Of a stretch of DNA of 64,000 nt, positions 1,659 through 24,319 are shown piece by piece. The DNA is taken from contig NC_047062.1 in NCBI RefSeq assembly GCF_902459465.1, positions 7,254,001 to 7,318,000 of the forward strand, in the 5' to 3' direction. The position numbers and the translations under genes were made by a program. Position 1 is the stretch's first letter. Every line of letters begins with the position of its first letter. This stretch comes from Asterias rubens. Taxonomy: Eukaryota. A model generated the notes under the pieces. That model was not told where the DNA came from and ran no database searches. It was given only the letters and a program-made list of their open reading frames with translations.

Positions 1659-2130
1659 CATACAACCTGTAGATCTGTTCCCTCGACAAGAATTCCTCTT
1701 CCGGTGGCTTAAATGTGGTTGCATTTTTTCTTGACCAAGTCCTACTGCCCATTTCGTTAACCCCACGGTCGGGTTCCCTTCGATGTTGCCTTGACCTTGA
1801 GGAGCTTGCATCCTCAAGCGTCCTCTCTCTCAAGTTGCTAGTTTGATTCAGAGGTTTTGCATACAGATATTCAACCGATGCATCCGTTCCAGTCAGAATA
1901 ATTTCAGGGTTACTGGTGGTGTCAGATCGGTGATCATCCAAACTGTGGACTTCAGCAGAGCCATGCACGTCTATGACTGGTGAACACTCCGCGGATAAAT
2001 TGATCACGCACCAGTCTTGTAGCAGTAGAACCGGGTCACCGAAAGAGAGCTCTGAGTCTGTCTCGCTGATTGGTAGAGTAGTACAGCTACACCAACTCAC
2101 GTACCTTCTAAGGTAGTATCCAATGGGCAT
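1659..2130 (-). CDS. Candidate alternative first coding exon D of the SYT14/16-like locus (MPIGYYLRRYVSWCSC...EEEFLSREQIYRLY)
   Basis: ATG at 2130; 157 codons + 1 nt open to donor G|gtgagc at 1659/1658 (phase 1). Upstream acceptor gattttctcag at 2153 enters out of phase with the other donors, so the 5' part is likely UTR. Confidence 0.5.
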
Positions 2131-3610
2131 GATACCAGCTGCTGAACATTCACTGAGAAAATCGATTCAATCTGACCATTGACTTATTGCCGGCAAGGCT
2201 TGTTCTTGAGAACATAAGAAACTTGGAACTGATGATGTTATGTTGAAAGATGTTGGGAATACCCCAAAAATACAACAGAGACTTGCATGTTTCGGAGTTC
2301 CTGGCATCAGAATGACTCATATTGTGTCAGCATTAAAGTGGCAATATTTGAAGCTGTACCCTTTGAATGGCAGACACATGATAACTACATCCATCCAGCC
2401 AGGTATCTGGTCTGACTCCTCACAGGAAATGTATCGTGCATTTTTCACTGATATATCCATCAACCACTAGTCAGTCGCACAAAGGTCTCATCTTCTACAT
2501 TTCAAGCTTAGTGGCTAACAAACAGAGCATCAATGCAGGCTTCCTGGAGATTAAGAGTTACCATACATTGGAAACTCTTCTTACGCAAATGAAAATACGG
2601 AGAGACTGTGCAGTTTTTGTCCCACGATAAATGATAATTCTACAATATACCAGCAATATCACAGGGTTGTTGCCAATGCAATGGCACTCGACTTGAATAC
2701 CAGCAAAAGGTATATCACCAATACCATAAAAAATGTCACCAAACACTGTAATAACTCAATTCCCACATCACATGGTAATTTGAGTCAGTGACTTACTAGT
2801 TCTATAACAGTTCCAGTATGCTGTACATGTGTATAGATTAACAATAACTAAAAAAAAACTATGGAAGTGTAGTCCAATCGTGTTAAAATTTAATAGCAAT
2901 ACAAAATTTAGTTGGCTAGAAGTTCAGCAGCTTTCGATAGTATGGAGTATTTTTTAGAAAAATTACACTTTGAAGTAACGCAATTATAGAAAAGGATGTT
3001 TTTATCCCCCAAAATTTGAATCAGAAAAATGTTACCGTTAGATACGCTTTTCAGACAAAACCACTCCGGAATTTCGGCAATATCTCAAAAAGGCTACCAT
3101 CTTTTCAAATGAATTTTCACAGGTTAATTTGATTGTACATGTAGGACAAAAACAATCGAATGAAATGATTATTAAAAATTAAGGCATTCTTTGCCTTTAA
3201 CTCTTTCAGGCGCAGACCAGTCGCTAGTGAGTTGTTGAAAATAGTTGTAAAATGAAAAAATAACAACCGCACGGCCACACACTTTTCAGAATGCAAACAG
3301 GACTCTTGAGGGTGCTATTGTGACCCTTTTTTTTTTGGGGGGGGGGGGGGTGTCACCATTTGTAAATGAAAGGGTTAAACAAATAAATGTGTATATAAGA
3401 TCAATTTCTCCGTAAGATATATGGTGCAGTACACTCCATCTAAAAAAGGATCACTGTACTTTGCACAGAATGTAACCTTCACATCTGGATCACTTGAACT
3501 TATATCAGTAGTAATAGACTCTGTGCATAAAATAATAATAAAACACTTAATATCGGGTAAATGATTGAGGGCTTCTGAGCACATAAAAAAGGAAGCACAA
3601 AAAAAATATC

Positions 3611-3745
3611 TCGGAAAAAAACCTTATGGCGCCACCATTTTTTACCTCATTTTTACAAAAAGGGATATATCATTGAGGTAAATTAGATACTATATTATTC
3701 CATATCGAATGAAAAAGTGGTGGTGCCATACGGAAACTTTTCCGA
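3611..3745. mobile_element. MITE-like inverted-repeat element
   Basis: TCGGAAAAAAACCTTATGGCGCCACCATTTTT pairs imperfectly with AAAAAGTGGTGGTGCCATACGGAAACTTTTCCGA. Confidence 0.5.
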
Positions 3746-3935
3746 AACTTTCATATAAAGAAAACAGTCACAAAGTTTAAAAAGAATAACAGATTTGTGT
3801 AAAAAAAGCAACACATTTTTACACCCAAGAAAATTATTGATTTAGTATTACACAATCAAGATTATTGTGATGACCTCAGGTGAAATGGGTCAAAACCCTT
3901 GCCCTCAAAAAATTAAGGTGAAGGAGTCTTCTCAC

Positions 3936-4347
3936 CTGTTGTTCCAGTCGCTTTTTGAGTATTACCGACCCTTTTAAATGTGTAGGAGAAATCACTGTTT
4001 CCATCATCAATATTCCTAGTTCGACTTCCCAAAGATCCATTGTCTTTGGTTTGGTTATAGATGTTATCTTTCCGTAACCCATCCCTGGCGTTATTATAAG
4101 ATTTATCGTTTGAATTTGTCTGTACAAGGTCCGGAGCGTTGACCAGCAGCAGCAACTCTGGCTTCCCGCTGGTGTCACTATTCTGGGAGTGGGTTTCGCT
4201 CTTTGGCAGCTCGGATACAGAGGTTAGAGCAGAGGACAGGAGGGGTGTGGTTTCTTTCAGCGTACTGCCACTAGACACAGAGAACACATCATCATCATCC
4301 TTAGCAGGAGACTTACAGCAACAGCAAAGACTCCCAGCCTTGCCCAT
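3936..4347 (-). CDS. Candidate alternative first coding exon C, with an N-myristoylation/palmitoylation-type start (MGKAGSLCCCCKSP...)
   Basis: ATG in gagATGG context with an in-frame stop 4 codons upstream; 137 codons + 1 nt to donor CAG|gtgaga at 3936/3935 (phase 1). Confidence 0.6.
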
Positions 4348-7300
4348 CTCTTCTAACTATAGTTTAGTCTTAAACTCCAAGGTGCAGACCAAAGTATTAT
4401 GAACTACCAATAATCATTGAGCATGGAAAACAAAGTTTAACGTAGAGTCCACTTAATGTAACAATGGTGTATGCCTGCTTGTGTTCGCCTCCATGAAGCT
4501 ATGCAGCAAGGTCCCAGCTCAAGAAACGTATATTGAGATACTGGTGTACACAATTGGAGCCACAGTCAACAAACAATTCGGAAGGAAAGAGACCTTCATG
4601 CACCAACGACTGAGTGTTTTGAAGCATGGAGGTAGAAACAGAGTCAACTCTATGCCAGTTGAAGTACATATGTACATGCTTGAATGCAATTCAATATGCT
4701 GAATGGGTGGCTGGAAGAAATCTGCACTGTCTGCATAACTCAAACAGCTTGAGTTCTAAAACTATATGTACATGATTCAACCATGGAGGTAGGACCCACG
4801 GTTCAATGGTGTAACATAATAGACCTAAGCCACTGAGCATTTGGAGCTGAAAAAAAAATACTACCCACATGCATGGCTGGTCATACAATTACACAATGTT
4901 ACCTCAACTTCCCTCAGCTGAGGAATTTGTGTTGGAAATTCACTTCAAACATCATACTGGTTGTTAAACATGGAGGTATAACAATAGACATATACATGTT
5001 GCTGTTTTAGTCCAATACACAAAACAAGGAAGATGCTGGTAACTCTAAGACTATTTAAACAAAAATGCATGAGCTTCTGTAGCAATGGCGGAAATCTGTA
5101 ACTTTAAAACTAGTCAATAGTTATTTATTTTTATGGCGGAAATCTGTCAACTCATTCCCAGGTCAAACTCATACCCAAGTCAACTCAACCCCCTCCCCAT
5201 TTTTTTTTTAAACCCAAGACAACTGGTATCCAGGTTATTTTGTTTGTTGATGATGGAGACTGGTTTTATTTTTAATTGTAAAAACTGGTTTGTAAATTTT
5301 GCTTAGTCAGTTTTTCAGCTGTGGAATGGGTTAATAATTTAAAATAAAATGGTGTTATTTCAATAAATCATTTCAAAAGAAAAAAAAAACAATTGGTATT
5401 TTGCTAGAAAAACAGTCAACAGGTTTAAAAAAAGAAAATTAATTCATGAAACTTAGTCAACTAAAAATAAGTCTTTTCATATTTTATTTTTTTTCTCTTC
5501 ATATCGGAGTAAGGGTAAAAAAAAAAAAAATTCCTTGACTTACAAAAAAAAGGTGTTAGAGAAAGGTATAGATAGTTTATAAAAAAATACACAAAAGATG
5601 AACTAGAAAAAAACACGATAGATCTTAGGCAGAAGGTTAGGTAGTTGGCTTTTGGTAAGATTAAATAATCACTGTTATCTCCATGGCAATGCAGTCTGAC
5701 AGTTTTTTTGTCAGTAGAGTAAGTTTCAGATCCTATAAGCACGCCAAACATAATGAAGTCAGCTTCATACGACCACTGACCAACATTCCTACACTTCAAT
5801 TCTATGATCTCTTGCAAACAATGAGAAAACAAGAGAGCCTTGTGCCTTTACCCAATGAGCAATGCCTTCACATCACCATCGGCCGATTATCTAGTGTTAT
5901 AGAAGGACCCCAAGATGGGGCTCAAAAAGGGGAAGGGGGTTCTGTGGCTCGTGTACCATATAAGGTAATACATCTATAATACCTAGCACAACCATGAGGT
6001 ATTTGAATTTTTAGTCCAAAGAAAGGATTAAAGTACTAAAAACAAAATGAACATTATTGTTCTTTTGTTATAAAAAAGTGTTTGATTATATATAATAATT
6101 TAGTAAACTCAATAAAAATAGTGTTAAAGTTTAAAAAACAGCAACATTTTCATCAGTGTCACGAAAGACCCATAGCACCTAGGAATCAAAACAACACTGT
6201 GGCACTACAGATTCCATAAAAAAAAACATTGGAAAATGCATAGTAATGAAGATGAACAACTTCCATCCAGTCTTTATGTCACAACACAGGCTGGTTTTAC
6301 AACCGTTGATGAGGCACTGGTACGCCGGTCTTGATTTCATTTTAAATTTATTTTACACGGTTCTGTGCTGGGAACCATGCAGGGCAATGCCAACGACGGG
6401 AAAAAACACCAGTTCTCTAATGGCAGATTGGGGTGGGGGGGGCGGGGCAGGGTTGGCGGGCTAGTTTTTTTCCCTATCAAATGTCAACAAAATCAAAGGG
6501 AAGAAAACTTTACACTTATGATTGAATAATGTTTCAACAAAAAATAAACAAGGATTAATAGTTAAATTAGTTTAAGTTGAACTCTAAGAATGTTTTAAGC
6601 ACCATTGTTAATTACCCAGATTCCGGATCAACTCATTATCAAAAGCATTGTAACCAGTCTTCAAACATTCAGTCAAGAAATTGTACAACCCAATTTTTGC
6701 TGAGTGAAATCAAATTTGACTTATTTCTACAAATGAATTTTGACAGATGATGCTGTAAAAAAACCAAAAACAAAAACTAACCAAAACCAAAACTGTTGCA
6801 TACATGCTATTGACATTGCACAAAATACATGTGACTCGCTTATTTTAAAATGGCTCTTGGACACGAGATATCATTAATAAATGTTGAGGTTTTCAATTAA
6901 TACCACTTACTATTACTGCACAGTTAGTGCTCTAATGCACATGCTATAGTCTACTATGCATGAATACTTGCACGCATGTTTGTGATTGCGAATGTAACAG
7001 TGAGATCTCGGCTTTCGATCAAGAATTTGTGTATTATAACCATAAAATGCCTATGATTTTTTTCACAGGACTCGGGAAAAGTACTGAGTATACAGTGCTT
7101 ACAAACATTAGTGTATGGGTAAAAACCAGCATTCATAAATGCCCCAGACTCCTTTTGGTGGAGAGCGCGTCACACGAGGGGCGTTTAAACGGTTGATAAT
7201 AACCAGCTGGAGCTGTTTATAACCGGCTGGTTTCCGCTTGTCGGGTGCACAAGATTATCGCGTGGAACGCAATTCATTGCTATTAGTAACAGCACGTAAT

Positions 7301-7834
7301 CTATTTCTAAGCGCGTGCGCAAACACACAACCCATGCGCAATCAAACAGATTCTTCACAAAGTTTGTGAAAATAATAATTCAAACTTCAAATTTTCAATT
7401 GTCAAAGTGTCCATAATTGTATTTTTTTAACGTTTTTTTTAACAAAAGGGCATTCATGAATGGGAATAAGAGTAGTGACTCATTCTTAAATGTCTGTTAA
7501 AACTTTGCAGGGTCGTTGCCGTGCGATAAAGGCCCTCGCATTCGGCTTGGGCCTTTAACACACGGAACTCGTCGCTACCCTTTTGTTCCCTTAATAATAA
7601 TCTTTATCCCCAATGCAAACTTACCATCTAATATTACCATATAATCGCACAGGCCCTCGGGTGTATAAGGTGCAGAACACTTTTTGAGACCAAAGTAAGA
7701 CGCGGCTTATACACCAAAGATTACAGTCTAATCATTATAACCTCCAAGTTTGAATATCCGAGTCAGAAGATCAAAACCAGTGACTCAAGTTACGGCTAAA
7801 TTCATGCCAGATACCAATGCAACCCAATGAATAC

Positions 7835-8135
7835 CTTCAGACATGCAGGTACCGCTATCATGATCTGTACTACAATCCGAATCCTTCGTGCTGCCTCCTT
7901 TCCTTAGTAAGAAATCAGGTAAAGCAAGCAATGACGACAGCCCTTTGGTATCCTTGGTTTGCTCCCCATCCTCCTTATCAGTGGTCCCCGTCTCAATGTT
8001 ATTTGTTGTCCCTGTCTCTCCAGCGTCGGTCTCATCAGTCTTAAGGGCTTCCCCCTCTGCGCAATTTTCCTCCTCATCGCCAAAAATTGTGTTCAATTTA
8101 TCGTCCATCCACTGCTTGAAGCGATCCAGCGCCAT
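7835..8135 (-). CDS. Candidate alternative first coding exon B (MALDRFKQWMDDKLNTIFG + acidic/Thr-rich tail)
   Basis: ATG at 8135 (gctATGG) with an upstream in-frame stop; 100 codons + 1 nt to donor GAAG|gtattc at 7835/7834 (phase 1). An alternative phase-1 donor G|gtacct lies 18 nt earlier. Confidence 0.5.
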
Positions 8136-10156
8136 AGCAAAACGGTCTGTCCTCTTACACCGACTTCATTGAGAACATCTTTCAACACAACACAATGAAC
8201 CAAACGGAGATCTTCTCAGCTTTCACAAATTATCTCAAAAATTCACAAACAAAATGGCTCAGACATAACACGATAATGCTGGAAAGACTTTTTTCGGCAC
8301 ACTGATGAGGTGTAAAAATTTAAAATTAAACAATGGTAACATGACAACTCCCATAGTAAATCCCTGCATTTTGAACGTGACCAAACAAGTTGAATGTGTT
8401 GATGGACCTTTTGTTCATGACCTTCTATGAAGAATTTCTATTGTTTTCCAATCCAATACAGCTGCTGCATTAAAATGTACAAGAAAAACAATAAAATCGT
8501 TGACAGACTTAGGATGGGATGATGATACCTCACACCACCACATTAAGCCTGGGTGGGTTCGATCATACCACATCACCATGGAAACATGGACAATACTCAA
8601 ACAAACAGCAACTTCAGTGTGATGCTACAATTCATTGCAAGAAATCATAAATTCCTTTTGAAATTAAACAAGGAAGTGGAATAGAATAAACACCTCAACT
8701 TTCATAACAAATCGTATAAAGAAAATTAATTATCAACAAATTAAAACATTTATTGGTGGTGTGTACACTAAATTTTCTGAAAGACGTTAATGCTTCATAC
8801 TGTATGTAAAATATGATTGATGCTGAAGTTACAATGGCACTGTCATGATGAGTGGATAAGATGGTACTAAAGAGTACCACAGTCATCGAACAATGTCAAT
8901 GACAACATGTGACACAACACCAGCACTGATAATGTCACTAATCAATCATGGAAGGTGCACTGAAGAGTCCTCTTGACAGCGACACTGATGTGGGATGACC
9001 ATGATATTGTGAGTGCTAATGACACCACTTCCAAGTGACAATAATGGCACTGTCAATCATGCGACAACTGACAAGAACACCAAACTACACTCAATAGTGC
9101 ATATAGGTGCATATATCATCGAGGAATAAGTCATCCATGCATTATGTACTCTTAGTTATGGATACAAGAAGTGACTAGTATGCCAATGCATGAACATGTG
9201 GGACTAAATGTGTATAAAATCAGTGTTAGTGAAATAATAACAACAACAATTAGAGTTATGTAGCGCACAAATTGCCAATGGATGCAATGCGCATAAGAGA
9301 AAATGTTTTACTTGGATGTTTAATTAATTAATTTTAAGTTACTGTTCTCCTCCCAGTACTTCTCCCTCTCCGTTTTTCTGTGTAAGATTTAGGCAATTTT
9401 AAATAGTAATGTAATGTTTTACTCCAAATTTTTAACTATGTAACTGTTGAAGTAATTCTGCTGCTCACAGCGAATTGAATAGATTTTTAATAACCATTGA
9501 ATGAATGAAATGAAAAAGTTAAAAATTATGAGGACAACCAGCTACCAAATTGGAGAACAGGCAAGTCATTAGACTTTTTGGAGGACAAAACAGTCTGAGA
9601 ATTTTGTTATTTAGACAGGAAGACTGTTCCATAGGTGGGAGGCAGCAGTGGAAGAGGCGTGTCACCAGCTTGAGTTTGCATGACTTGTTCACCCTGAGGG
9701 AGATATCATCATAGCTTGGAAGTGACTACAGGCAGTCTTGGATTTCAAGAAGTCAAGAGTGATAATCAAGAGACAATGTACATCAGATTTTGTGCTTCAA
9801 TTATAGTTTAACCAATCTGTACTAGACACGCATCATCTTATCTTGAGAACTGACGACTGTCAAAATAAATTGTGCTAGTTTTAGTGCTGTTATCATTAGT
9901 TTGGTGTTTACATGTTGTATGTTAGTGTGAAAAAAATGATTTGATTTGATGTCCACTTTTATTCCATAAGGAACATTATACAAAATATCATTAAGTATAC
10001 AAGACTTTAGTTTCCACCACCAGTTAATCTAGGTTAACATGAAATGAGACTTTCTGAGATCAATATAAATAGGAAATTCAGGTATACAAACATCAACCTA
10101 AACCAATGTTGTCCTTTTTGGTCTGATAACAAGTCAAAAGTTCAGCCCAGATCAGG

Positions 10157-10390
10157 GGATCAGGTTGGCTCAGTGGTTTCGTTCCCTGCTTTTCATCTCT
10201 GTGTACCCTGGTTAGAATCCCACCTCGCATGTGGATTGGGTTGTCAGTTCCTACCTGATTGCATTGGTTTCCCCTCTCGGGTGGGGGGTTACTCCCACAT
10301 CTAAAACTGAACATTTCTACTCATTTCCTATTCATCTTGTTATTAGCGCGAAATGGCTGTTGGATGTGTATTCAAATAAATAAAAATAAA
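10157..10390 (+). mobile_element. tRNA-derived SINE, second family, with A-rich tail
   Basis: A-box-like TGGCTCAGTGG, degenerate B-box GGTTAGAATCCC, and AAATAAATAAAAATAAAA tail at about 10375-10390. Confidence 0.55.
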
Positions 10391-10509
10391 ACAATATTTG
10401 CTGAGGGTTGTTGCTGATTCTAGGACAAACTCCGCAAAGTTATTTGGGGGTTAGAGTTAAATGTTATTACACCATGAGAACCACCATATGAAATCTGCAT
10501 GTAGCGTAC

Positions 10510-10611
10510 CATTACTTTGTCCATCAAAGCTGCTATACCAAATGCCATCATTTTGTGGTTGAGGAATCAGAGAAACACCACTCATAACAGAGACATATTG
10601 CTGACTTTGAC
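10510..10611 (-). CDS. Candidate symmetric (phase 1-1) internal exon (GQSQQYVSVMSGVSLIPQPQNDGIWYSSFDGQSN)
   Basis: Acceptor ctcattttcag|GT and donor AATG|gtacgc; 102 nt, open in the phase-1 frame. Not in the ORF track. Confidence 0.4.
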
Positions 10612-11104
10612 CTGAAAATGAGGTACATTTACTGAGGTGTTACGTCCATGTATGACCAACTGCAGTAGTTCATAAACTCAATGGTAAGTTATCCCAATAC
10701 CCAACCAATGATCGACAGTAAATACTATACCTAAATACATGTACTGTAGTAATAAAAATGAATTTACGTCCTACTACTGCTATCTAACATTTATTCATCT
10801 ATCTAATAATTGCTCTTTTTTTGGTGCATCATATGCCCCTGGTCCAGCAAAGCGTGTTTGTTATATTTATGGTTTTTTTTTTAAGTTGAGTTATAAAAAG
10901 AAACCAAGGTCTAATTTCATGTCCCTGCTAACAGTTGAATTCTGAACTAACAACATGTTGAATCGAATCTCCGTAGAATCACACACTTTGCAAGGCAACA
11001 TAAACGCATAATTCTGCAATAAAGTAGGCCTGTAAACCCTTAATGTAGCTTTCTGTGTATCAAATTTGAATACCTAAATCCTCACTAATATCATGGCTAT
11101 TGCT

Positions 11105-11106
<2 letters not shown>

Positions 11107-11150
<44 letters not shown>
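11107..11150. repeat. (TAA)n microsatellite
   Basis: About 14-15 perfect TAA units. Confidence 0.95.
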
Positions 11151-11665
11151 TTTACATGTACAATAACCAAAATTGAAACGTAAGCCTAAGCTAAGAAGAA
11201 ATCCAGAACATGTTGAAGAGAAATACAATACAAATGCAATATCAAAGAAAACATCGAAGGGTAGAAATGGATATTGTAGTTAGCTAGTATTGCTTGCACT
11301 TGTAACTTTACACTTGCGTTTCATAAATCAATTCAAACACAATAATGACATGGGCGCTTTTACAACTTTTGATTTTTTACATTTTTAAATCTATAAACAA
11401 AACTATAAAAATGTATAAAAATATGCGGCAATTTGTTGATGGGTAAAAAAATGCTACACACTTAAGTTTATCATTGTTATTGTTATTACTTAGGTTATAG
11501 TCCTAACTAAAAAAGGGGAAAAAAAAGAAAGAAAAATATCACCAAAACATTTAACTACCCTGTTTGTAAATCCTTTTGTTTACAGATAATTTTGTATACA
11601 GTTCTTTGTCAAATCCATTTTAATATCCCCAGTATACTACACTAGGGGATCAAACAGTTTAATAC

Positions 11666-11735
11666 TAATCCAATCCAATCTAATCTGATTTAATCTAATC
11701 TAACCTAATCCCATCTCATCTAACCTAAATCTAAT
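11666..11735. repeat. Degenerate (AATCT/AATCC)n pentamer repeat
   Basis: taatccaatccaatctaatctgattttaatctaatctaacctaatccc... Confidence 0.7.
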
Positions 11736-12118
11736 ACAATGTTCTACATTGCACCAGAAATTGCAGCATACCCCTCTACTTTTCACTTATAGTGCACCAA
11801 CACAAGCATTATGCATGTCCACATACCGCCACACAAAGTTTTAGCAAACAAAATAAATAGCTATCATATATTATTGACAACAGGAAACTACAGTTTTACC
11901 CCTTGTACAAATTATAAATCCAATTGGTCTTTTCCAAGGGTTGCCTTTATTTTCAGCCACTAGTAATGACCCTAAACACTAACCTTTTAAAAACATGTAT
12001 CTAAACAATTGTTTCGGAATATATACTGTAATAATTCATTTACATTTTAATACGTAGATCTTTTTTTTAGGAAGCTAATAATGTTTACCTCAAGTTATTT
12101 TTTAATCACAGAACTTAC

Positions 12119-12497
12119 CCTCACTATTAGTTGGATCAAACCAACCAGGTATTTTATATGAATATTTAGTCGGAGTCTGTGGTTCAAGTTCACTAGGAGT
12201 CATAGGACTATCATCCGGTACACAGGCATCAACTTCATCCGACCTATCATCAGTCACTTCAATCGAATTCACTTCATTCTGACATGACCAACTAACAACG
12301 GTAACTTCTCCATCGATGTCTTCGAGTTCTTCCAATATTAGTCCAGGGTTATCAATACCAATCTTCCCATTGTTGTTATTCTTAGAGACTCGTTTCTCTT
12401 TAGCTACCTCGACATGCTGTACTTGTTGATCAACTCGTGCATCCGAAGACATAGACTGGACGACTTCGCTCAACCAGTCTGTAAGAGTGTCCAACAT
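12119..12497 (-). CDS. Candidate alternative first (or internal) coding exon A (MLDTLTDWLSEVVQSM + acidic tail)
   Basis: ATG at 12497; 126 codons + 1 nt to strong donor GAGG|gtaagt at 12119/12118 (phase 1). A phase-1 acceptor (ctgccag|aa acg acc atg) just upstream also permits internal use. Confidence 0.55.
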
Positions 12498-13317
12498 GGT
12501 CGTTTCTGGCAGTGGATTTCCTCTCCAGAGAAATCAACAAGAAATCACAACCGTAATCCCATGGCATACGGTGATACCAGGAAGAGAAAGACCGGTCCAC
12601 ATGGACTTGCACTGGGAGTGTTTACTAAAAGCAGTTGGGTTCTACTACATGTGCATAACACACCATAGACATACTGTTGCATGCAGACCTATATCATCAA
12701 ACCATGGAGCAACTAGTGCATGCCTGGTACATTGTACTCATGTGCTGGAGTTGAAGAGGCAGACAATAAATCAATTGACAAGTGGGAACAAAGGCCAACA
12801 AGTTATGAATTATGCATGAGTCTGGTTTCTGGCTTTAATTCCATGCCTCACTAAATAAGTAGATGGAACCATGGAGGATGGTTACACAAGGTCTCAAATG
12901 CAAAAAATAGTTAATGGCCTGACAGCCTTCCTAAGAGGTGTCAAAGTGTGCAATCCTAAGCAGAAATCTGGCACCATGCCATCCCGGAAGATCTAACACT
13001 GCAACTTTTCAAAGCCAGGCGGGTAGCCTTGTTTCCAAGATGTTACAATCCATGATTATTTCACAAGCACTTTTGCACTTTAAAAAGTATTCCAACACTA
13101 GAGGGAGCAATTTACACGATGTAAGCGTAACCGTACCACAGTGTTACGTAACGTGGATGTCAACAAGAATCGAGTAGAAGTCTATTGGGAGTCAATAGTG
13201 AATCAATATCCATTAGAGATACTACAACTAAATTCAAGTCCGAATGAGTTGATTTATATTACAGAAGCTAGGTTCGCATTGAGGACAGACTTGTACATTT
13301 TTTCTTGTGGGGAGGAA

Positions 13318-13361
13318 AAACAAACAAACAAACAAACAACCAAACAAACAAACAAACAAAC
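13318..13361. repeat. (AAAC)n microsatellite
   Basis: aaacaaacaaacaaacaaacaaccaaacaaacaaacaaacaaac. Confidence 0.85.
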
Positions 13362-16635: not shown

Positions 16636-16674
16636 GCCTTAGCTTTCGATCCAATCCGGACCTTCTTCAGAGGC
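16636..16674 (-). ncRNA. Minimal type I hammerhead ribozyme (PLE-type)
   Basis: Minus strand reads GCCU CUGAAGA A GGUCC GGAUU GGAUC GAAA GC UA AGGC: stem I GCCU/AGGC, CUGANGA core, stem II GGUCC/GGAUC, GAAA, palindromic AGCU in place of stem III, and a UH (UA) cleavage site. Confidence 0.85.
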
Positions 16675-17187
16675 ATAAGACAAGTACAAACAAATACATA
16701 TCCATTTATAGAAAAAGAGAGGGGGAAAGGGATTAAGGAAAGGATCCAGAAAGAAGCGGGAAAATAACAGCCAATCAAAGTTCCTATTTCAGAAACAATA
16801 TTGGGGGCTATGAACCAATAGGAGTGAAGTGGCGAGGACAAAGGATGTTTAGAATGAAAGGAAGGGTTACTGGACCATAAAAGTGGTAAATGTATTGTTC
16901 GACAACAATGGAGGGAGACATGAAAGGGTAGGATTAGAGAGCAAGTTGCATCATGATGCAACTAACAATGGTCAATTAATAAGAATAGCAAGATCAAAGG
17001 TATGATGATTTTAAAAATAGGTATGAGGGACCTGTGGAAAAAAAAGGGGGGGGGGTTACTTACATCAGATAGTTACAGTGATGAATTTATAAAAACAACT
17101 TTAAACTAGGTTAATTTATACTTTATGTACAGAGTATATACAACATATGAGTTCTTAGGCAGAAGTGAAGTGGAGGGTAATGAGAAG

Positions 17188-17706
17188 TTATTTAACACCA
17201 GTGTTTATGTTAAGTCCAAAGGGTTTTACTGTCTTGAGTTGGTGAATCCAGTGTGATTCTCTATTCTTGCGGTGTGTGTCATCACCATTGCAAGCTTCAA
17301 TCACCAGAAGTTCAACATCAATGACACTATGATTGGGGCTGTTGAAGTGGATAGAGACTGGGTACGGTTTCTTAGTCTTTATGGAAGAGACATGATTCGC
17401 AAAGCGAAGACTAAGTTTGGTCTTAGTCTCTCCCACATATTGTAGCCCACATCTCTTACATGATATGACATAGACTACATTAGACGTGCTGCATTCAGAG
17501 TCGGTCTTGATGTTGTATGAAGAGCCAGTGGTATGACTCTTCACCTTAAGTGAGGGCTTAATGTGCAGACACGTTTTGCATTTGGAACGGGTACATTTGT
17601 GACAGCCCAGTATATCTGTCGGGGGTTGTGTTTGGACTGTACCTGGGGGAAGTTTGGCCCTGACTAGTATGTCACCAAGGTTCTTAGGGCGGCGGAATGC
17701 AACCAT
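17188..17706 (-). CDS. PLE GIY-YIG endonuclease domain (C-terminal part of the PLE ORF)
   Basis: VAFRRPKNL linker, Cys pairs (CHKC...CKTC), VVYVISCKRCGLQYVGET, LRFANH, RESHWI, FGLN. The frame stays open upstream to the direct-repeat junction; the RT domain is absent. Confidence 0.9.
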   Translation of the reverse strand: MVAFRRPKNLGDILVRAKLPPGTVQTQPPTDILGCHKCTRSKCKTCLHIKPSLKVKSHTTGSSYNIKTDSECSTSNVVYVISCKRCGLQYVGETKTKLSLRFANHVSSIKTKKPYPVSIHFNSPNHSVIDVELLVIEACNGDDTHRKNRESHWIHQLKTVKPFGLNINTGVK

Positions 17707-18302
17707 GGGAACCTCAGTGATTGCTGAGTGTAACCTAACTATCCATTATTATAAATATTATTAGAGGCAGTGAACTATCCAGAAACTTTAACATTATAAT
17801 ATATTATACTTTTTTAACACAAAGACAGCCAGAGTCATATTAAATCATGTGATTAATTTATCAGCAAATTTGAGAGAAACTATCTTCAAGCGATGTATTT
17901 TGCCAGACAATTTGAAAGTTCAAACTGATTGATAAATGAACTGAATTCTTGGCTGGCGCTCATCCACGGTCTTGAATATTGGCAAAGGTCTTGATGCTCT
18001 TCCTGCAAGGTGTTTTCGAGACAAAATAAACCAGCCAAATGATTTCCTATATCCGCCTTCTTAACATCTCACAATGCATCTTGGAAATAATCAACAAGTA
18101 TCGTTGATGCAGATTTGGCCATGTTTGACACAGTCTGCTGCACTGTACAGGTTCTGGTTGACTGTTTAAAGGAAAAGTGAAGCTACGGTACTAGACAACC
18201 TTCAGAGCAATCCTCTATAAGTTCATTGCAAAGCTCTTAGAAAAATTTAAAAGCTGTGGAGAAAATGTTCTTTAACCTTGCATTTGGTTGTTGAGCCACT
18301 TG

Positions 18303-18627
18303 GAGCAAGTTTGAGTGGGCACATTGAGTCAACCCGTGGTTGACTGCTGACCAGCAATGTACATATACTTGCACACCAAGGCACTCACTCGATCAACTCA
18401 TTTGGAAGTCTAGTCAACCTTCCGCATTTTAATTATAGCATCACTGGTTCCCATCTGCGCTTTACACATGTTGGAATGAAACATGCTGTTGGGACCACTG
18501 AAGAAACCATGGGCTCGAGGCTGGTTCCAAATGGTTGACCACAGTAGTCAACCAATGGTTGACCAGCTTGGGTTCGAGTGCAAATGGTCCACCTTTGGTT
18601 AACCATTGTGCCCACTCAAACTTGCTC
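18303..18627. mobile_element. MITE with 21-bp perfect TIR and 3-bp (TTG) flanking duplication
   Basis: GAGCAAGTTTGAGTGGGCACA (18303-18323) / TGTGCCCACTCAAACTTGCTC (18607-18627); TTG at 18300-18302 and 18628-18630. Confidence 0.75.
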
Positions 18628-18859
18628 TTGGCTGAGTATAAGAAAGAACGCTTGCAGAGCATAAAGCGCAACAACCCAAGTTCTCAGTAAATGCGGCAGT
18701 TATTGAAAACTATTCAATAAAACAAACAATAAAATGATCGGACCAAAGAGATCTCTTTCCTCTTGCATTACAGTACCGGGAACAATCAAGATTAAAAACA
18801 ATTTGTCGTAATCAGGAGTATTCCAAGAGCGATCATCCATATGCTATAAGTATATGGGG

Positions 18860-18930
18860 TAATAATGTGAAGCGCTTTGGGACGCCCTCCGGGTGTGAAA
18901 AGCGCTATATAAAAACGGGTTATTCTAATA
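18860..18930 (+). mobile_element. L2/CR1-type SINE/LINE 3' tail fragment
   Basis: TGTGAAGCGCTTTGGG...AAAGCGCTATATAAAAACGGGTTATT followed by ATT repeats. Confidence 0.45.
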
Positions 18931-19598
18931 ATTATTATTAAACGGGAGTTCAACACAAGAGAGTTAGATTCTTTAAACAGCGCAGTTAAGTGATTGTCAG
19001 CAAATTACACAGTTGGGACCAATTTGACTAATTTTACCACTTAACTATGCAGTTGTACACGCATTCTCTGTCAGTTTGGAATACCCACAAACAACTTCTT
19101 GTTTACAAAAACATTTATGTACATATAAGTGACTGAAAATATGTTGATTAACAGTGGTAGTCATAAAACAAGGTAGAATCATTTTTGATTCTTGACTGCA
19201 TTAAACAACAAATATTTGAACCAAGGGGTTAGTTTAAAGGTGTTGAGGATGTATGATGGTACTACAATAAAAGAAAGAAATCCAAGCCCAATGCTTAAGT
19301 CAGAGACGTTGTGGTCTGTTGTCCGTAAAACACAATAATGGACTTGGACTGATCATGATTCTCAAAGCTATGTATTAAGAGTTGCGGCATGGCGGCAGGG
19401 CTCAAAATTAACATTGAACCACAGGCCCTAAGCTAGTGATTCAAGCGAAGGACAGTAAATTCACAAATATCAAGCCCGGTGGTTTTGTGTTTTTCAATTA
19501 AATAACAGTACGCTAAGGTATCTTTTTTTAATAGATGTTAGGGTACCTTATTGTGGAATATCTTTGTGAAAACATTTTTGACGTCAAATCTGATTCAA

Positions 19599-19966
19599 AG
19601 CCATTGGACACTTTCGGTAAACAGTATTGTCCAAAGGCCCACACTTTGTGTATCACAACTGATATAAAAAATAACAAACCTGTGAAAATTTAGGCTCAAT
19701 CGGTCATCGGAGCCAGGAGAAAATAACGGGGAAAACCCACCCTTGTTTCCGCACGTTTCGCGGAAACAAGTGTTTGAAATAAAAATCCGTAATTCTCGAC
19801 AACGAGAATTGATAATTGTTTTAATGTTTTCTCGAAAAGTAAAGCATTTCATGGAATAATATTTCAAGAGAAGTCTTTCCCCATTACCTTCTGTAAAACC
19901 TGTAAGTTATTTGTAAATCTGTGAACTTTTTTTTTTTTTTTTTTGTGCCGAAAGTGTATAATGGCT
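19599..19966. mobile_element. MITE family A-related subfamily (TTAA-type ends)
   Basis: AGCCATTGGACACTTTCGG ... CCGAAAGTGTATAATGGCT|TTAA; shares AAATAACAAACCTGTGAAAATTT..GCTCAATCGGTCATCG with family A. Confidence 0.75.
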
Positions 19967-20559
19967 TTAATGTCTTTCAATTCCGTCGAGTATCGAAGGA
20001 TAGTGAATGTCTTTTCTTAGTGCTTGTTCAACTCATTTTGATTCTGGTCTTGTAAAATAAATAACATGTATGGTCCGGGACAAATCTTGAGCTATATTTC
20101 CCCTCCCCCCACAAAAAAAAATTCCATTCATGAGAGGGACCAGTTTTCTTCAGTCCAGTGGTTGCTGGATGCCCATTTTCTGTCCACTTGCAGCACAATC
20201 CCAAGGGCAGCCCAAGGGCAGCCTAGTCTAGCACCCTGTGTGTACCACAGACATAAAGAACCTATAGACGGACAGTAGGGAGCGCCCAACTGTAATTTTG
20301 TACTTTCTCAGACCATGGGCGGAAGTTAAGGCGCGACCCGCTGCTTTTAGTACACGTTTTGGTATAACCTTGAGGCAGTGCCCGCAACGTCTTAATTATA
20401 TTTTATAAAGTTGTATGAGATGATGACCCGATGCGGGATTGTAGCCTTAATATGTAAGACAACACTTCATAAATAATCCATATGACTGTTTGCAAATGTT
20501 GTGATTGAGGTTGAACTGTTAAAATGTCATGTTTACAATTTTTTTCCGGGAAATCCAGT

Positions 20560-20745
20560 CTAAACACGCTTTGAAACGCAAGTTCATACTATGGCCCTCC
20601 GTATTGCGTACGCTCGCGTCTAATGCACACCAAACAATCGCGTATCAGTTGCACCTTTGTCTATGCGGTACGCGTCATCAGCGCCCGGCGCAAAACACGC
20701 ACCGACGCGCCTTTTGGTCGGAAAGTGTGTCACAAACATATTTTT
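20560..20745. promoter_or_regulatory. CpG-dense segment, candidate promoter/enhancer
   Basis: About 20 CpGs in under 200 bp against a CpG-poor AT-rich background; no TIR seen. Confidence 0.3.
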
Positions 20746-21357
20746 TAAATAAAATTCTTCTAATTTCATCGTTTTGGAGAAAGTTCAGAAAGAGGAGGAG
20801 AAACAGCAAACAACTAACGGCAGAAAAGGTATCTAGCTAATGATCTTACATTGTTTCTTAGACTTTGGTGATTTGTTTATCCATAAAAACACACATTTTC
20901 TGTCGTCATCTCTTCACTCGCCCATTGCTTTACACAAGTTTTCGCTTGCGTTTTCACAGATTTTGCCCATGGTTTGGGTATAGTCGGGTGCTGTTCAAAT
21001 TACACTATCCAGACGTTGATTTCCATAGGTGCTGTCCGTCTATAGGTTCTTTATGTCTGTGGTGTGTACACATGAATTTTTGGGTACCAAACATGGCTTC
21101 TTTACGCAAGTTGTTGTACTTGATACAGCTTAACCAGATTATGCTACCATTTTAATATTTGAAATGTAAACATTGAAATTGTAACAAAAATGGGGATTGA
21201 CTTCAAGAACCACGAGCACTTTCCGTCAAATCTTCAGCCGACATCACCAAGGTCCAATAGGGAAAAAGAGTACAAATTTCTCACTACACACAAACAAACT
21301 GCTGGCCACCAATAAGCCTCCTTTTGACCTCAGCGAGGGGGCTATTTACGCCTGTGA

Positions 21358-21519
21358 CATAGACTTTATCGCAAATACTTGGTGTGCGCGCTTTAGGCGT
21401 GGAATGGGGTGCTAGCTGGTCTGACTAGTGATAAACTTTTATTGCTAGCTAGACCAGCATGCAGCTCATTCAACAATTAGTTCAAATGCAATGGGTATTT
21501 GCGTATTCAAGGGGTCTAT
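21358..21519. mobile_element. MITE family E copy (ATAGAC...GTCTAT ends)
   Basis: CATAGACTTTATCGCAAATAC ... GTATTTGCG...GGTCTAT; homologous to 22920-23067 and 23980-24115. Confidence 0.65.
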
Positions 21520-21546
21520 TAAAGAAAATACACTTTAGGATCATAC

Positions 21547-24319
21547 CTCCATTCATCATAGATGAGGAGCTCTTTGCCCTGAAGCTCCCACCCCTGGTTT
21601 TCTTGGCGAGTCCGCTGCCGTTGCCAGTGTCCTTGGCGCTGCTGACGTAGTGCTCATAGCGTAGAAGCATCTCATTATCGCTGTCTGATGAGGAATCATC
21701 TTCATCATAACCATAACTCTCACCTGTGGAAATGGGGTTAATTTTAAGAGAGGAAATTAGCATTTAAAAATTGTTGAATATGTATTTTAAGACATATTTA
21801 AAGGAACACGTTGCCTTGGATCGATCGAGTTGGTCCTTGAAAAGCGTTCTGCAACGTTTGTTATAAAATCGATATGGTTAGAAAGATGTTGTAAAAGTAA
21901 AATACAATGATCTACACAAATACGCCTGGCAATTGCTTAGTTTTCGTTTTACCTCGTCGACTAACACAGTCGGCCATTTATGGGAGTCAAACATTTGACT
22001 TCCATAAATGGCCGACCGTGTTAGTTCGCGTTGAAAATGAAAACCGTGCAATTTGGAGTAATACTTGTGTGGATCATTATATTCTACTTTTGAAGGCAGT
22101 GGACACTATTGGAAAATCCTCAAAATAATTATTAGCATAAAACCTCACTTGGTAACGACTAATGGGGAGAGGTTGATAGTAAAAAACATTGTGAGAAACG
22201 GCTTCCTCTGAAGTAATGTAGTTTTCGAGAAAGAAGTAATTTTCCATGAATTTTAGGTCTCGTAATCGAGCATCTGAAAGCACACAACTTCGTGTGACAA
22301 GGATGTTTTTTTTCTTTTATTATTATCTCGCAACTTCGACGACCGATTAAGCTCAAATTTTCACAGCTTTGTTATTTCATGCATATGTTGAGATACCGCA
22401 ACTGTGAAGAGTAGTCTTTGACAATAACCAATAATGTCCACTGTCTTTAAAACATCTTTCTAACCATATTCATTTCACATCAAAGGGTTTCAAGCGTTTT
22501 TCATAGACCAAATCGTCTGATCCAAGGCAATGTGTTCCTTTAACGTGATCTTGAAGTCTTTGCATCTGGCCAAGTGACCAACAAATTTTGCACATTTTCT
22601 CCCAAAGGTTTGACAGATAATGCCATTTAGAAAGTGAAAGAGAGGAGTGAAAAACGCTAAAAAATAGCGTGTACATTTAGCTAACTAATACTATAATCTT
22701 TGACGGATTACTTTGTTCACTGCCCTAAAATGAAAGTTTACAACTGCCTCGGCTAAACAAAATTAGCTCTCTAATATACATCCCCCCTCCCAACAATGTG
22801 GCAAAAATTAAGTGAAGCACCTTACAGAATGACAATTTAACATGTAAAGTCATCCCTTTGTCCAAGTTACAAGTAGATATCAAATTATCATTTCAATAGA
22901 GGGCGGTAAACAAAGAGCACATAGACCTTTTCGCAAATACTGGGGCGCGCGCGTAATACTGGTGCATTGTGGTCTAGCTGGTATCCAAATTTGATTCATA
23001 TCTATCCCACAATGCACCTCATTCAACAGTCTGCGCTTGCGCATTGGTATTTGCGATAAGGTCTATGATCTATACATCTAGAATTTGGTTATTTATCAGT
23101 CTTGTTCACAAGCTACCCAGAAACACCTGTTGCACAAAATGGGAAAAAGAGCTTGTTTTTTACAGGTCTTCAAATTTTTGTTTTTTTATTCTAGGTTACT
23201 TAAAGGCAGTGGACACCATTGGTAATTACTCAAAATAATTATTGGCATAAAACCTTACTTGGTAACAAGTAATGGGGAGAGGTTGGTAGTATAAAACATT
23301 GTGAGAAACGACTCCCTCTGAAGTGGAGTATTTTTCGAGAAAGAAGTAATTTTCCACGAATTTTATTTCGAGACCTCAGATCTAGAATTTTAGGTTTCGA
23401 AATCAAGCATCTGAAAACTTTGTATTACAAGGGTGTTTTTTCTTTCATTATTATCTCGCAACTTCGATGACCGATTGATCTCAAATTTTCACAGGTTGGT
23501 TGTGTTGTGCATATGTTGAGGTACAGCAAGTGAGAAGACTGGTCTTTGACAACTACCAATAGTGTCCACAGCCTTTAAACACTAAATGTTGAAGTGCCTC
23601 GAATGTCAATAAGTGACAGATATGAATGCTATAAGAAGGCACCTGTATCATTATGTACCACTTTCTAAAGGGATTGAGGTTAGGCATTGACATAACCAAG
23701 CAGCCATCTTAAGCCTGGTTTATACTTCCTGCGAATGTGAAACATAACTTGCATCAGTGGACTTGTGCTCAACTCCTGCAAAACATTTGCTGTGAAAACA
23801 GACCTGTGACATCAACATGCATATGGCATTAGCATTTGCAGGAAGTATGAGTCGGGCTTGAGAGCTCTAAACAATAAAAACACACAGCTATTTATGCGTG
23901 GCGCAGAGGTTGGGCCAATGACCAACCTTCTTTTGACCTCTAGTCCGAGGGCGCCCTACTTAAATGATATCATTTGCAAATAGACCTTTTCGCAAATACC
24001 CATTGCGTAAGCACTAACTGTTGAATGAGGTGCATGCTGGTCTAGCAAGCGATCAAACTTGATCAGAACACTATGCACCTGATTCCATGCCTGAGTATTT
24101 GCGATAAGGTCTATGGCGCAAAAGCTTTAGGACCGTTGCCCTCAAACCTACCCAGCTGGGACTTCTTCTTATCTTTCTTTGATTCCTTCTTCTCCTCGAA
24201 GCAATCGCAGCCTCCACAGTTGACGAAGCAGGCCATCTTGTTGAGGTACATGCAGAAGAGAAGCAGCACCACCAGCATCCCAGCGATGACGGAGATGAAA
24301 ACGATGGCCGCTAACGGGA
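21547..24319 (-). CDS. SYT14: Synaptotagmin-14-like N-terminal exons (TM exon 24152-24319; acidic exon 21547-21723); first exon unresolved, C2-domain exons not in window
   Basis: Spliced frame xPLAAIVFISVIAGMLVVLLLFCMYLNKMACFVNCGGCDCFEEKKESKKDKKKSQL-GESYGYDEDDSSSDSDNEMLLRYEHYVSS... resembles recalled SYT14 (LLLFLYINKKFCFENVGG; SSSESEDEALGKY). Canonical ag/gt sites; both exons are phase 1-1 (168 and 177 nt). Confidence 0.6.
21802..22539. mobile_element. MITE family B (TTAA|AGGAACACGTTGCCTTGG TIR) carrying a nested family A copy
   Basis: TIRs at 21802 and 22539 with TTAA flanks; an uninterrupted copy lies at 50012-50342. Confidence 0.85.
22094..22446. mobile_element. MITE family A copy (reverse orientation) nested in family B
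   Basis: TGAA|AGGCAGTGGACACTATTGG ... AATGTCCACTGTCT|TTAA. Confidence 0.85.
22920..23067. mobile_element. MITE family E copy
   Basis: CATAGACCTTTTCGCAAATAC ... GTATTTGCGATAAGGTCTATG. Confidence 0.75.
23204..23574. mobile_element. MITE family A copy (reverse orientation)
   Basis: TTAA|AGGCAGTGGACACCATTGG ... CCAATAGTGTCCACAGCCT|TTAA. Confidence 0.85.
23980..24115. mobile_element. MITE family E copy
   Basis: ATAGACCTTTTCGCAAATAC ... GTATTTGCGATAAGGTCTATG. Confidence 0.75.

What the first reader, a model, noticed from the sequence alone, without database searches (positions are those of the whole stretch)
1659..24319. Synaptotagmin-14/16-like locus with an apparent series of interchangeable N-termini
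Seen: downstream of the SYT14-like TM and SSSDSD exons (last donor at 21547, phase 1) lie four 300-470 nt minus-strand ORFs. Each starts at an ATG with a nearby upstream stop and ends at a phase-1 GT donor (12119, 7835, 3936, 1659). Five donors of one phase are what alternative first exons splicing to one shared downstream exon, left of base 1, would give. Known: SYT14 has an N-terminal TM and SYT16 lacks it. Inference: one gene may produce TM, lipid-anchored and soluble C2-domain isoforms from alternative promoters. I cannot see the C2 exons, so the four exons could belong to another gene.
Basis: partly seen in the sequence, partly recalled or inferred. Interest (0 to 1): 0.75.

Follow-up and report, generated by a model that had tools for sequence, protein, structure and literature searches.

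The report
Sea-star Syt16 gene, alternative first exons
A sea-star membrane-trafficking gene of the synaptotagmin-14/16 type appears to start its protein in several different ways, with a membrane-spanning start or one of up to four other starts; the same trick is already published for this gene in sea urchin, sea squirts and vertebrates, so this is a fuller example, not a new principle.

Summary
On the minus strand, six exons all end at a phase-1 GT donor. They are a TM exon, an acidic SSSDSD exon and four ATG-initiated ORFs, here called A to D.

The TM and SSSDSD exons match published Syt16 N-termini (E=3e-15, 6e-9 and 2e-4).

RNA contigs from two Asterias-like organisms show that C and D are 5' exons. 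Each contig runs on upstream of the ATG for 440-500 nt, past the in-frame stop, and no acceptor is used. C is spliced exactly at 3936, and no C-to-D joint is listed. This rejects the rival reading of serial cassette exons for C and D.

C and D are conserved as coding sequence in other echinoderms. A and B rest on ORF, donor and Kozak context, plus RNA words that could not be placed on either exon.

Three things are not shown: the shared acceptor, the C2 exons (none lie in the window), and use of D's donor (one contig reads through it).

Craxton 2010 (PMC2823689) already reports TM-less N-terminal Syt16 variants joining one common exon in S. purpuratus, Ciona and vertebrates. I therefore call this a new member of a known kind. 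The modest additions are up to four TM-less starts, one of them a conserved MG..CCCC lipid-anchor-like start.

The scan's only other note on this locus (s1-178789) sits on this same window, not on other DNA.

The parts
24152..24319 (-). TM exon, phase 1-1, 168 nt. It encodes ..PLAAIVFISVIAGMLVVLLLFCMYLNKMACFVNCGGCDCFEEKKESKKDKKKSQL. It needs a short upstream ATG exon, which I did not find.
   Evidence: Splice sites and frame. BLASTP against Ciona savignyi Syt16 var1 gives 46% identity over 48 aa, E=3e-15. Against Xenopus tropicalis syt16 var1 it gives E=6e-9. The comparison sequences come from PMC2823689.
21547..21723 (-). Acidic serine-cluster linker exon, phase 1-1, 177 nt: ESYGYDEDDSSSDSDNEMLLRYEHYVSS...
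   Evidence: It matches X. tropicalis syt16 var1 'SYGEDEDLTSSSDSDE..' with E=2e-4. It fits the SSxS[E/D]xE linker motif that PMC3433447 reports as conserved in all SYT14 orthologues.
12119..12497 (-). Exon A coding part, MLDTLTDWLSEVVQSM..., 126 codons plus one base. Candidate alternative first exon.
   Evidence: ORF, consensus donor G|GTAAGT and A at -3. RNA runs X1 and X2 hold 6-8% of the sampled words of 7750-12650, but these were not placed on an exon. Only same-species copies were found. A fairly good phase-1 acceptor at 12520 leaves internal use possible.
7835..8135 (-). Exon B coding part, MALDRFKQWMDDKLNTIFG..., 100 codons plus one base. Candidate alternative first exon.
   Evidence: ORF, donor G|GTATTC, G at -3 and G at +4. 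Only a same-species copy was found. RNA words as for A. This is the weakest of the four.
3936..4849 (-). Exon C. Leader about 4348-4849, coding part 3936-4347: MGKAGSLCCCCKSPAKDDDD..., 137 codons plus one base. Alternative first exon with a start that looks like a myristoyl/palmitoyl anchor.
   Evidence: Contigs X1 rec7 (3933-4849), X2 rec15 (4178-4758) and X3 rec24 (3933-4735) run unbroken through the ATG and the in-frame stop at 4359. X4 rec32 (4346-4517) adds the ATG and leader only. X1 rec7 and X3 rec24 carry 14 and 24 unplaced letters beyond 3933, and X4 rec31 ends at 3937. Neighbouring intron bins have zero depth. The listed differences from organism A number 6 in the CDS and 24 or more in the leader, though 81 further differences were not shown. 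The homologue L003 is 73% identical in protein, starts MGMAGRLCCCCK and has frame-keeping indels.
1659..2568 (-). Exon D. Leader about 2131-2568, coding part 1659-2130: MPIGYYLRRYVSWCSCTTLPISETDSELSF..., 157 codons plus one base. Alternative first exon; use of its donor is not confirmed.
   Evidence: Contigs X2 rec11 (1723-2568), X1 rec6 (1812-2393), X3 rec20 and X4 rec29 (2023-2183, no mismatch) cross the ATG at 2130, the candidate acceptors at 2141/2138 and the stop at 2169. X1 rec5 (1594-1834) reads through the donor. In the homologue L002/P0002, the ATG and a phase-1 G|GTGAGT donor are conserved. In its conserved core the mismatches fall 6/5/16 by codon position.

Best explanation
The window holds the 5' half of the sea star's single Syt14/16-group gene, called 'Syt16' in Craxton's nomenclature. 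The gene is transcribed leftward.

One promoter lies upstream of 24319. It gives the classical form: a short ATG exon (not found), then the TM exon, then the acidic SSSDSD exon.

Inside the intron of more than 21 kb that follows, up to four further promoters drive first exons A, B, C and D. Each carries its own leader, its own ATG and an N-terminal module of 100-157 residues.

All six donors are phase 1 and end in G, so any of them can join one common downstream acceptor left of base 1 in frame. The junction codon would be Gly if the acceptor begins GT. The common part would supply the linker and the C2A-C2B tandem.

Promoter choice would thus decide how the same C2 tandem meets membranes:
- by a transmembrane helix;
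- by a dual-lipid-type anchor (C: MG..CCCC);
- by a conserved basic/Cys motif (D: RRYVSWCSC);
- or with no obvious anchor (A, B).

Shown here: the exon anatomy and phases; the Syt16 identity of the TM and SSS exons; first-exon behaviour of C and D; splicing at C's donor; coding conservation of C and D.

Inferred: the common acceptor and C2 exons, first-exon status of A and B, use of D's donor, lipidation and localisation.
For: Anatomy and phases.

Syt16 identity of the TM and SSS exons: against sequences printed in PMC2823689. The SSxSExE motif comes from PMC3433447.

RNA:
- Contigs cover 3933-4849 and 1723-2568 without a break at the candidate acceptors or the in-frame stops.
- Intron bins 201-400, 2601-2800, 3201-3400, 5001-5200 and 5601-5800 have zero depth, and 401-800, 3401-3600 and 5201-5400 next to none. 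The cover is therefore RNA, not DNA.
- C's contigs stop at 3933/3937 and carry 14-24 further letters. This boundary is canonical (GT) only on the minus strand.
- The alignments run 3 nt past the exon end. The next exon therefore probably begins GTG, which would read Gly then a G-initial codon. The sea-urchin junction reads '..G|VTRTD'.
- No C-to-D joint is listed, although joints of lower depth are.

Conservation:
- C against L003: coding 84% and leader 71% identical, with triplet indels only in the CDS and MG/CCCC kept.
- D against L002: mismatches fall 6/5/16 by codon position, and the ATG and the phase-1 GGTGAG donor are kept.

No C2 exon and no shared exon lie inside the window.

Precedent: S. 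purpuratus Syt16 has three N-terminal variants joining one exon. TM-less variants also exist in Ciona and in vertebrate Syt16.
Against: - The common acceptor and the C2 exons were never seen.
- D's donor is not confirmed. One contig (X1 rec5, 1594-1834) reads 65 nt into the intron and ends 8 nt past an AATAAA at 1607-1602.
- A and B have no junction or leader evidence and no cross-species homologue in the searchable collections. A has a respectable phase-1 acceptor at 12520.
- The leaders of C and D hold 12 and 17 upstream ATGs. I ran no expectation test, but this does not look like the depletion usual in well-translated leaders.
- A phmmer scan of 1.84 billion representative proteins found no longer protein containing exon D. 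No annotated D-isoform is in that library.
- Contig depth is a per-contig mean, so minor spliced-in forms cannot be excluded.
Confidence: 0.68

Rival explanations
1. The four ORFs are serial or optional internal phase 1-1 cassette exons of the linker between the SSSDSD exon and C2A. They would be spliced TM-SSS-A-B-C-D, and the ATGs near their starts would be coincidental.
For: Every ORF has a phase-1 AG between the upstream stop and the ATG. A's, at 12520, follows a good pyrimidine tract. The TM and SSS exons are themselves 1-1 exons. Syt linkers are known to carry alternative cassette exons, for example Syt7.
Against: For C and D, RNA contigs in four runs pass straight through the candidate acceptors and the in-frame stops into 440-500 nt of contiguous upstream sequence. 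No C-to-D joint is listed. An ATG within 13 codons of the stop in all four ORFs has roughly a 0.002 chance. All four ATGs have a purine at -3. The MG..CCCC start and D's ATG are conserved in other species. No longer protein containing D turned up.
Confidence: 0.1
2. Some or all of A to D belong to transcripts that never reach the Syt16 C2 exons. They could be separate small genes or promoter-proximal truncated transcripts inside the Syt16 intron. D, for example, could be a single-exon mRNA for the 174-aa read-through ORF, ending at the AATAAA at 1607-1602.
For: X1 rec5 reads through D's donor and stops at 1594, just past the AATAAA. The leaders are rich in upstream ATGs. No protein joining D to C2 domains exists in the representative library. 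The C2 exons were not seen.
Against: C is clearly spliced at its phase-1 donor. D's phase-1 GGTGAG donor is conserved in a distant species, while the read-through tail is not. Six same-strand donors of one phase, all ending in G, inside one intron of a gene whose sea-urchin orthologue uses exactly this design would be an odd coincidence.
Confidence: 0.17
3. The ORFs are chance open frames or decayed repeats with no function.
For: A and B have no cross-species support. There are no Pfam hits.
Against: C and D are transcribed and spliced or conserved, with coding-type substitution patterns. The four are among the few long ATG-ORFs of the window.
Confidence: 0.03

Closest known systems
Strongylocentrotus purpuratus Syt16 var1/var2/var3 (Craxton 2010, BMC Genomics 11:37, Additional file 30)
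   Same: It is an echinoderm orthologue. It has three transcript-supported N-terminal variants, including forms that lack the TM domain. All join one common exon ('VTRTDVVEQG...') upstream of C2A. Two of the three variable ends finish in G, as a phase-1 G-ending donor would give.
   Different: The urchin has three variants; the sea star has five candidates. The variable urchin N-termini are not in the held text, so I could not test homology with A to D. The sea-star common exon was not seen.
Vertebrate SYT16 (Strep14), TM-containing and TM-less variants, and SYT14
   Same: The TM segment, the NKK.CF juxtamembrane motif and the SYG.DED..SSSDSD cluster align with the window's two exons. In vertebrates a TM-less first exon replaces both of these exons and joins a common exon ('FRSGVSEK..').
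   Different: The vertebrate alignments held show one full-length TM-less N-terminus (..FFQPFSSWISRVYEALQQAGD..), beside shorter variants. Exon A's likeness to it is not significant: BLASTP gives E=1.7, and a small profile ranks random window segments higher. No MG..CCCC start appears in those alignments.
Ciona Syt16 var1/var2
   Same: It has the best sequence match to the TM exon (E=3e-15). A TM-less variant is produced by alternative splicing.
   Different: Only two variants are known. The details of the TM-less start are not available in the held text.
SH4-type dual-lipid N-termini (Src-family kinases, G-alpha subunits) and Cys-cluster palmitoyl anchors (GAP-43 type); from general knowledge
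   Same: Exon C starts M-G-x-x-x-S followed by CCCC. MG and CCCC are kept in a second asteroid.
   Different: This is a motif-level resemblance only. Position 6 is R in the other species, and lipidation is untested.

Membership tests
Syt14/Syt16 group of synaptotagmins | N-terminal single transmembrane helix followed by a basic/Cys juxtamembrane motif (..NKK.CF..) | tested here: met
   The TM exon 24152-24319 aligns to C. savignyi Syt16 (46% over 48 aa, E=3e-15) and to X. tropicalis syt16 var1 (E=6e-9).
Syt14/Syt16 group of synaptotagmins | Acidic serine cluster SSxSExE in the linker after the TM | tested here: met
   Exon 21547-21723 reads SYGYDEDDSSSDSDNE. It matches the Xenopus SYGEDEDLTSSSDSDE with E=2e-4. 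The motif is described in PMC3433447.
Syt14/Syt16 group of synaptotagmins | Tandem C2A-C2B domains at the C-terminus | not testable with these tools
   tblastn with sea-urchin Syt16 C2A, C2B and shared-exon peptides finds nothing in the window (best E 0.7). The exons must lie left of base 1, which the tools could not reach.
Syt14/Syt16 group of synaptotagmins | TM-less N-terminal variants joining the same exon upstream of C2A as the TM form | tested here: inconclusive
   C is a spliced 5' exon and D is a 5' exon, but the acceptor was not seen. The three extra aligned bases suggest the next exon begins GTG, which is compatible with the urchin G|V junction.
Multi-promoter gene with alternative first exons | Each variable exon carries its own leader, contiguous with the genome, and an ATG preceded by an in-frame stop | tested here: met
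   Met for C (leader to about 4849) and D (to about 2568) in RNA contigs. The stop/ATG geometry holds for all four. The leaders of A and B were not tested.
Multi-promoter gene with alternative first exons | Variable exons are not spliced to one another | tested here: met
   No 3936-to-D joint appears among the listed joints, and C's 24 extra letters were not placed within 1-6000. Limit: 8 joints and 535 loose ends were not printed. A/B/SSS joints were not tested.
Multi-promoter gene with alternative first exons | All variable donors share one phase | tested here: met
   All six donors are phase 1 and have G as the last exon base.
N-myristoylated and palmitoylated N-terminus | Met-Gly start, small residue or Ser at position 6, adjacent Cys cluster, and actual lipid attachment | tested here: inconclusive
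   MGKAGSLCCCC in the window and MGMAGRLCCCC in L003: MG and CCCC are conserved, but Ser6 is not. Lipidation itself cannot be tested here.

The most novel reading that the evidence does not exclude
One ancestral-type Syt14/16 gene in asteroids uses five promoters to put the same C2A-C2B tandem on membranes in five different ways. These would be a TM helix, a myristoyl/palmitoyl-type anchor, a conserved RRYVSWCSC motif and two anchor-less heads. That is a wider 'targeting cassette' array than the two or three forms recorded for any Syt gene. It would suggest that the vertebrate split into SYT14 and SYT16 partitioned an older multi-promoter repertoire.
Probability: 0.35. Interest if true: 0.45.

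Novelty: new member of a known kind. Interest (0 to 1): 0.3.

Why it matters
Syt14 and Syt16 are among the least understood synaptotagmins; SYT14 is linked to human neurodevelopmental disease according to PMC2823689. An invertebrate deuterostome with a single gene and clearly separate N-terminal modules offers a simple system. It would let one ask what membrane attachment does for this class of C2 tandem, and whether lipid-anchored forms stand in for the TM form in particular cells. The principle is already published: TM and TM-less forms arise from alternative 5' exons. The gain here is a better-resolved example and one conserved lipid-anchor-like start, not a new mechanism.

Tried and rejected
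1. Serial cassette-exon model. Rejected for C and D on RNA contigs. It remains open for A and B.

2. Pfam on the four ORFs and on the TM and SSS exons: nothing meaningful.

3. phmmer of exon D against 1.84 billion representatives. The only real hits were two short metagenome contigs carrying host DNA. The bacterial FG-GAP-repeat hits (P0003-P0007) are spurious repeat-summed matches.

4. Word-indexed searches with C, A and B. These gave genomic ORF fragments only and no spliced product. The length filter excludes full-length isoforms, so a blank means little.

5. Homology of A with B: no BLASTP alignment.

6. Homology of A or B with the vertebrate TM-less SYT16 N-terminus (..SSWISRVYEA..). BLASTP gives E=1.7 for A and nothing for B. 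A 3-sequence profile scored random window segments higher than A. Rejected as not distinguishable from chance.

7. Within-species contigs L001, L004 and L005 carry too few differences for any test of selection.

8. A search for the common exon or C2 exons inside the window found none.

9. The S. purpuratus variant N-termini are not in the held supplement text, so they could not be compared with A to D.

10. Earlier scan notes for a neighbouring window with C2 exons: none found.

11. The first coding exon of the TM isoform, expected to be about 5-6 codons, was not located.


Full report
**Observation**

All of the following lie on the minus strand.

- The TM exon spans 24152-24319. It is 168 nt, with acceptor ttttgactag|TC and donor CTGG|GTAGGT.
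- The acidic exon spans 21547-21723. It is 177 nt, with acceptor ccatttccacag|GT and donor GGAG|GTATGA.
- Both are symmetrical phase 1-1 exons.

Four ORFs follow:

| ORF | ATG | Last exon base | Donor |
|---|---|---|---|
| A | 12497 | 12119 | G\|GTAAGT |
| B | 8135 | 7835 | G\|GTATTC |
| C | 4347 | 3936 | G\|GTGAGA |
| D | 2130 | 1659 | G\|GTGAGC |

All four donors are phase 1. The in-frame stops lie 12, 10, 3 and 12 codons upstream of the ATGs, and each ATG has a purine at -3.

Each ORF also has a phase-1 AG between the stop and the ATG (12520, 8146, 4352, 2141/2138). From sequence alone, a chain of 1-1 cassette exons was therefore a serious rival.

**What the gene is**

Pfam sees nothing in these N-terminal pieces. 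Published sequences do.

- Craxton's manual Syt collection (PMC2823689) prints invertebrate and vertebrate Syt16 N-termini.
- The TM exon aligns to Ciona savignyi Syt16 var1 at 46% over 48 residues with no gap, E=3e-15. The match includes ..ACF.NCGGCD.
- It aligns to Xenopus tropicalis syt16 var1 at E=6e-9.
- The acidic exon aligns to the Xenopus 'SYGEDEDLTSSSDSDE' segment at E=2e-4.
- The acidic exon also carries the SSxS[E/D]xE linker motif that PMC3433447 reports as conserved in all SYT14 orthologues from mammals to insects.

These two exons are therefore the 5' coding exons of the sea star's Syt14/16-group gene. Earlier notes of this scan name the genome as Asterias rubens; I did not verify this.

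No C2 exon and no equivalent of the urchin common exon is present anywhere in the window. tblastn with urchin peptides gave a best E of 0.7, and no suitable open frame lies in 1-1700.

**RNA evidence**

Only one read-laying run was allowed, and I used it on 1-6000. Four RNA runs were laid. X1-X3 come from organism A, about 95% identical to the window. X4 comes from organism B, about 99-100% identical.

Cover is exon-specific:
- Bins 201-400, 2601-2800, 3201-3400, 5001-5200 and 5601-5800 have zero depth.
- Bins 401-800, 3401-3600 and 5201-5400 have next to none.
- The signal is therefore RNA, not contaminating DNA.
- High depths at 1-200, 1001-1400 and 3601-4000 are repeats.

Exon C:
- Contigs X1 rec7 (3933-4849), X3 rec24 (3933-4735) and X2 rec15 (4178-4758) run without a break through the ATG, the candidate acceptors at 4352/4349 and the in-frame stop at 4359. 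They continue into about 400-500 nt of upstream sequence. X4 rec32 (4346-4517) adds the ATG and part of the leader.
- At the other end, X1 rec7 and X3 rec24 stop at 3933 and carry 14 and 24 further letters that lie on nothing in 1-6000. X4 rec31 ends at 3937.
- This is the predicted donor, and the boundary is canonical only on the minus strand.
- The alignments overrun the exon by 3 nt. The next exon therefore probably begins GTG, giving a Gly junction codon followed by a G-initial codon. That is compatible with the urchin junction '..G|VTRTD'. This is weak support, with about a 1/64 chance.
- No joint from 3936 into D is listed, although joints of lower depth are. Eight joints and 535 loose ends were not printed.

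Exon D:
- X2 rec11 (1723-2568), X1 rec6 (1812-2393), X3 rec20 (2054-2210) and X4 rec29 (2023-2183, no mismatch) cross the ATG at 2130, the AGs at 2141/2138 and the stop at 2169.
- D's donor is not confirmed. X1 rec5 (1594-1834, depth 3.3) reads 65 nt into the intron and ends 8 nt beyond an AATAAA at 1607-1602.

C and D are therefore 5' exons with their own leaders, and the cassette model fails for them.

For the A-B region, the second run search shows that X1 and X2 hold 6-8% of the sampled words of 7750-12650. Given the roughly five-fold word loss at 95% identity seen for C-D, that could mean 1-2 kb of transcribed sequence.

**Conservation**

Exon D. phmmer against 1.84 billion representatives found only two real hits:
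- a 98%-identical metagenome contig;
- P0002/L002, from a more distant animal, 49% identical.

In L002 the ATG aligns with ours. A phase-1 G|GTGAGT donor sits at the equivalent place, and the read-through tail is unrelated. In the conserved core (RRYVSWCSC..LPISET.SE.SF) the mismatches fall 6/5/16 by codon position.

Exon C. P0009/L003, from another assembly (GCA_014845345.1), is 73% identical in protein.
- Read from its first in-frame ATG, it starts MGMAGRLCCCCK, against our MGKAGSLCCCCK.
- Indels are multiples of three in the CDS but not in the leader. The coding part is 84% identical and the leader 71%.
- Against organism A, the listed differences number 6 in C's CDS plus one 3-nt insertion. 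The leader has 24 or more, plus 1-nt indels. This table was truncated.
- L003 diverges from the window for the last 35 nt before our donor. I could not explain this.

Exons A and B. Only same-species copies were found, and these carry too few differences to test selection.

**Comparison with what is known**

[quoted passage not shown] It also states that vertebrate Syt16 has both TM-containing and TM-less sets, and that human SYT14 has TM-less forms.
- The held part of Additional file 30 shows three S. purpuratus variants with different sequence up to a common 'VTRTDVVEQGISLDQEG...' exon just before C2A.
- In vertebrates, the TM form (...SSSDSDE..SRSQS|FRSGVSEK) and the TM-less form (M..FFQPFSSWISRVYEALQQAGD...|FRSGVSEK) likewise converge on one exon.

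The possible additions here are:
- the number of TM-less starts, up to four;
- the conserved MG..CCCC start of C;
- the conserved RRYVSWCSC start of D.

A tempting likeness of A (MLDTLTDWLSEVV) to the vertebrate TM-less helix (..LSSWLSQLYEA) is not significant.

**Mechanism and confidence**

The most likely reading (about 0.68) is alternative promoters and first exons that feed one phase-1 acceptor left of the window. Promoter choice would then swap the membrane-attachment module in front of one C2A-C2B tandem.

Points against or still open:
- The acceptor and the C2 exons were not seen.
- D's donor is unconfirmed, and there is a possible promoter-proximal poly(A) site.
- A and B are untested. 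A has a usable acceptor.
- The leaders hold many upstream ATGs: 12 in C and 17 in D.
- No longer D-containing protein is in the representative library.

Rivals:
- separate or truncated transcripts that never reach the C2 exons (0.17);
- cassette exons, for A and B only (0.10);
- chance ORFs (0.03).

**Verdict**

This is a real and nicely resolved example, but of a design already described for Syt16 in urchin, ascidians and vertebrates. I rate it a new member of a known kind, with interest 0.3.

Noticed in passing
window 17188-17706 (-), with 16636-16674: A 172-aa ORF with a GIY-YIG domain (Pfam E=7e-7) lies in the intron between the SSSDSD exon and exon A. It fits a Penelope-like retroelement. 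This is not decisive, because minimal hammerheads often score below threshold.
   Followed up: partly
window 38662-39045 (+): This ORF segment matches the OPA3 family (PF07047, E=4e-26, profile positions 32-121 of 121). It is probably the last coding exon of an OPA3-like gene on the opposite strand. That would bound the 5' end of the Syt16-like gene to about 24.3-38 kb.
   Followed up: no
window 1594-1612 (-): An AATAAA at 1607-1602 overlaps the stop of D's read-through ORF (174 aa). One RNA contig (X1 rec5) ends at 1594. This may be a promoter-proximal intronic polyadenylation site that gives a truncated D-only transcript.
   Followed up: partly
window 2169 (-) versus L001: The in-frame TGA upstream of D's ATG is TGG in a 98%-identical metagenome contig. 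There the frame stays open for 110 more codons, up to an upstream ATG (P0001). The stop is thus polymorphic or species-specific, and the extension looks non-coding.
   Followed up: no
window 1-200, 1001-1400, 3601-4000: Very high RNA contig depths (10^3-10^5) with many rearranged joints mark interspersed repeats. The one around 1100-1160 looks tRNA-derived and SINE-like.
   Followed up: no
L003 685-745 versus window 3936-3971: The other asteroid's copy of exon C matches up to ..FSYTFKR and then diverges completely for the last 35 nt before our donor, with no phase-1 GT at the matching place. This could be a shifted donor in that species or a misassembled 981-bp contig.
   Followed up: no
window 4348-4849 and 2131-2568 (-): The transcribed leaders of C and D contain 12 and 17 upstream ATGs with short uORFs. 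This suggests regulated or inefficient translation of these isoforms.
   Followed up: partly
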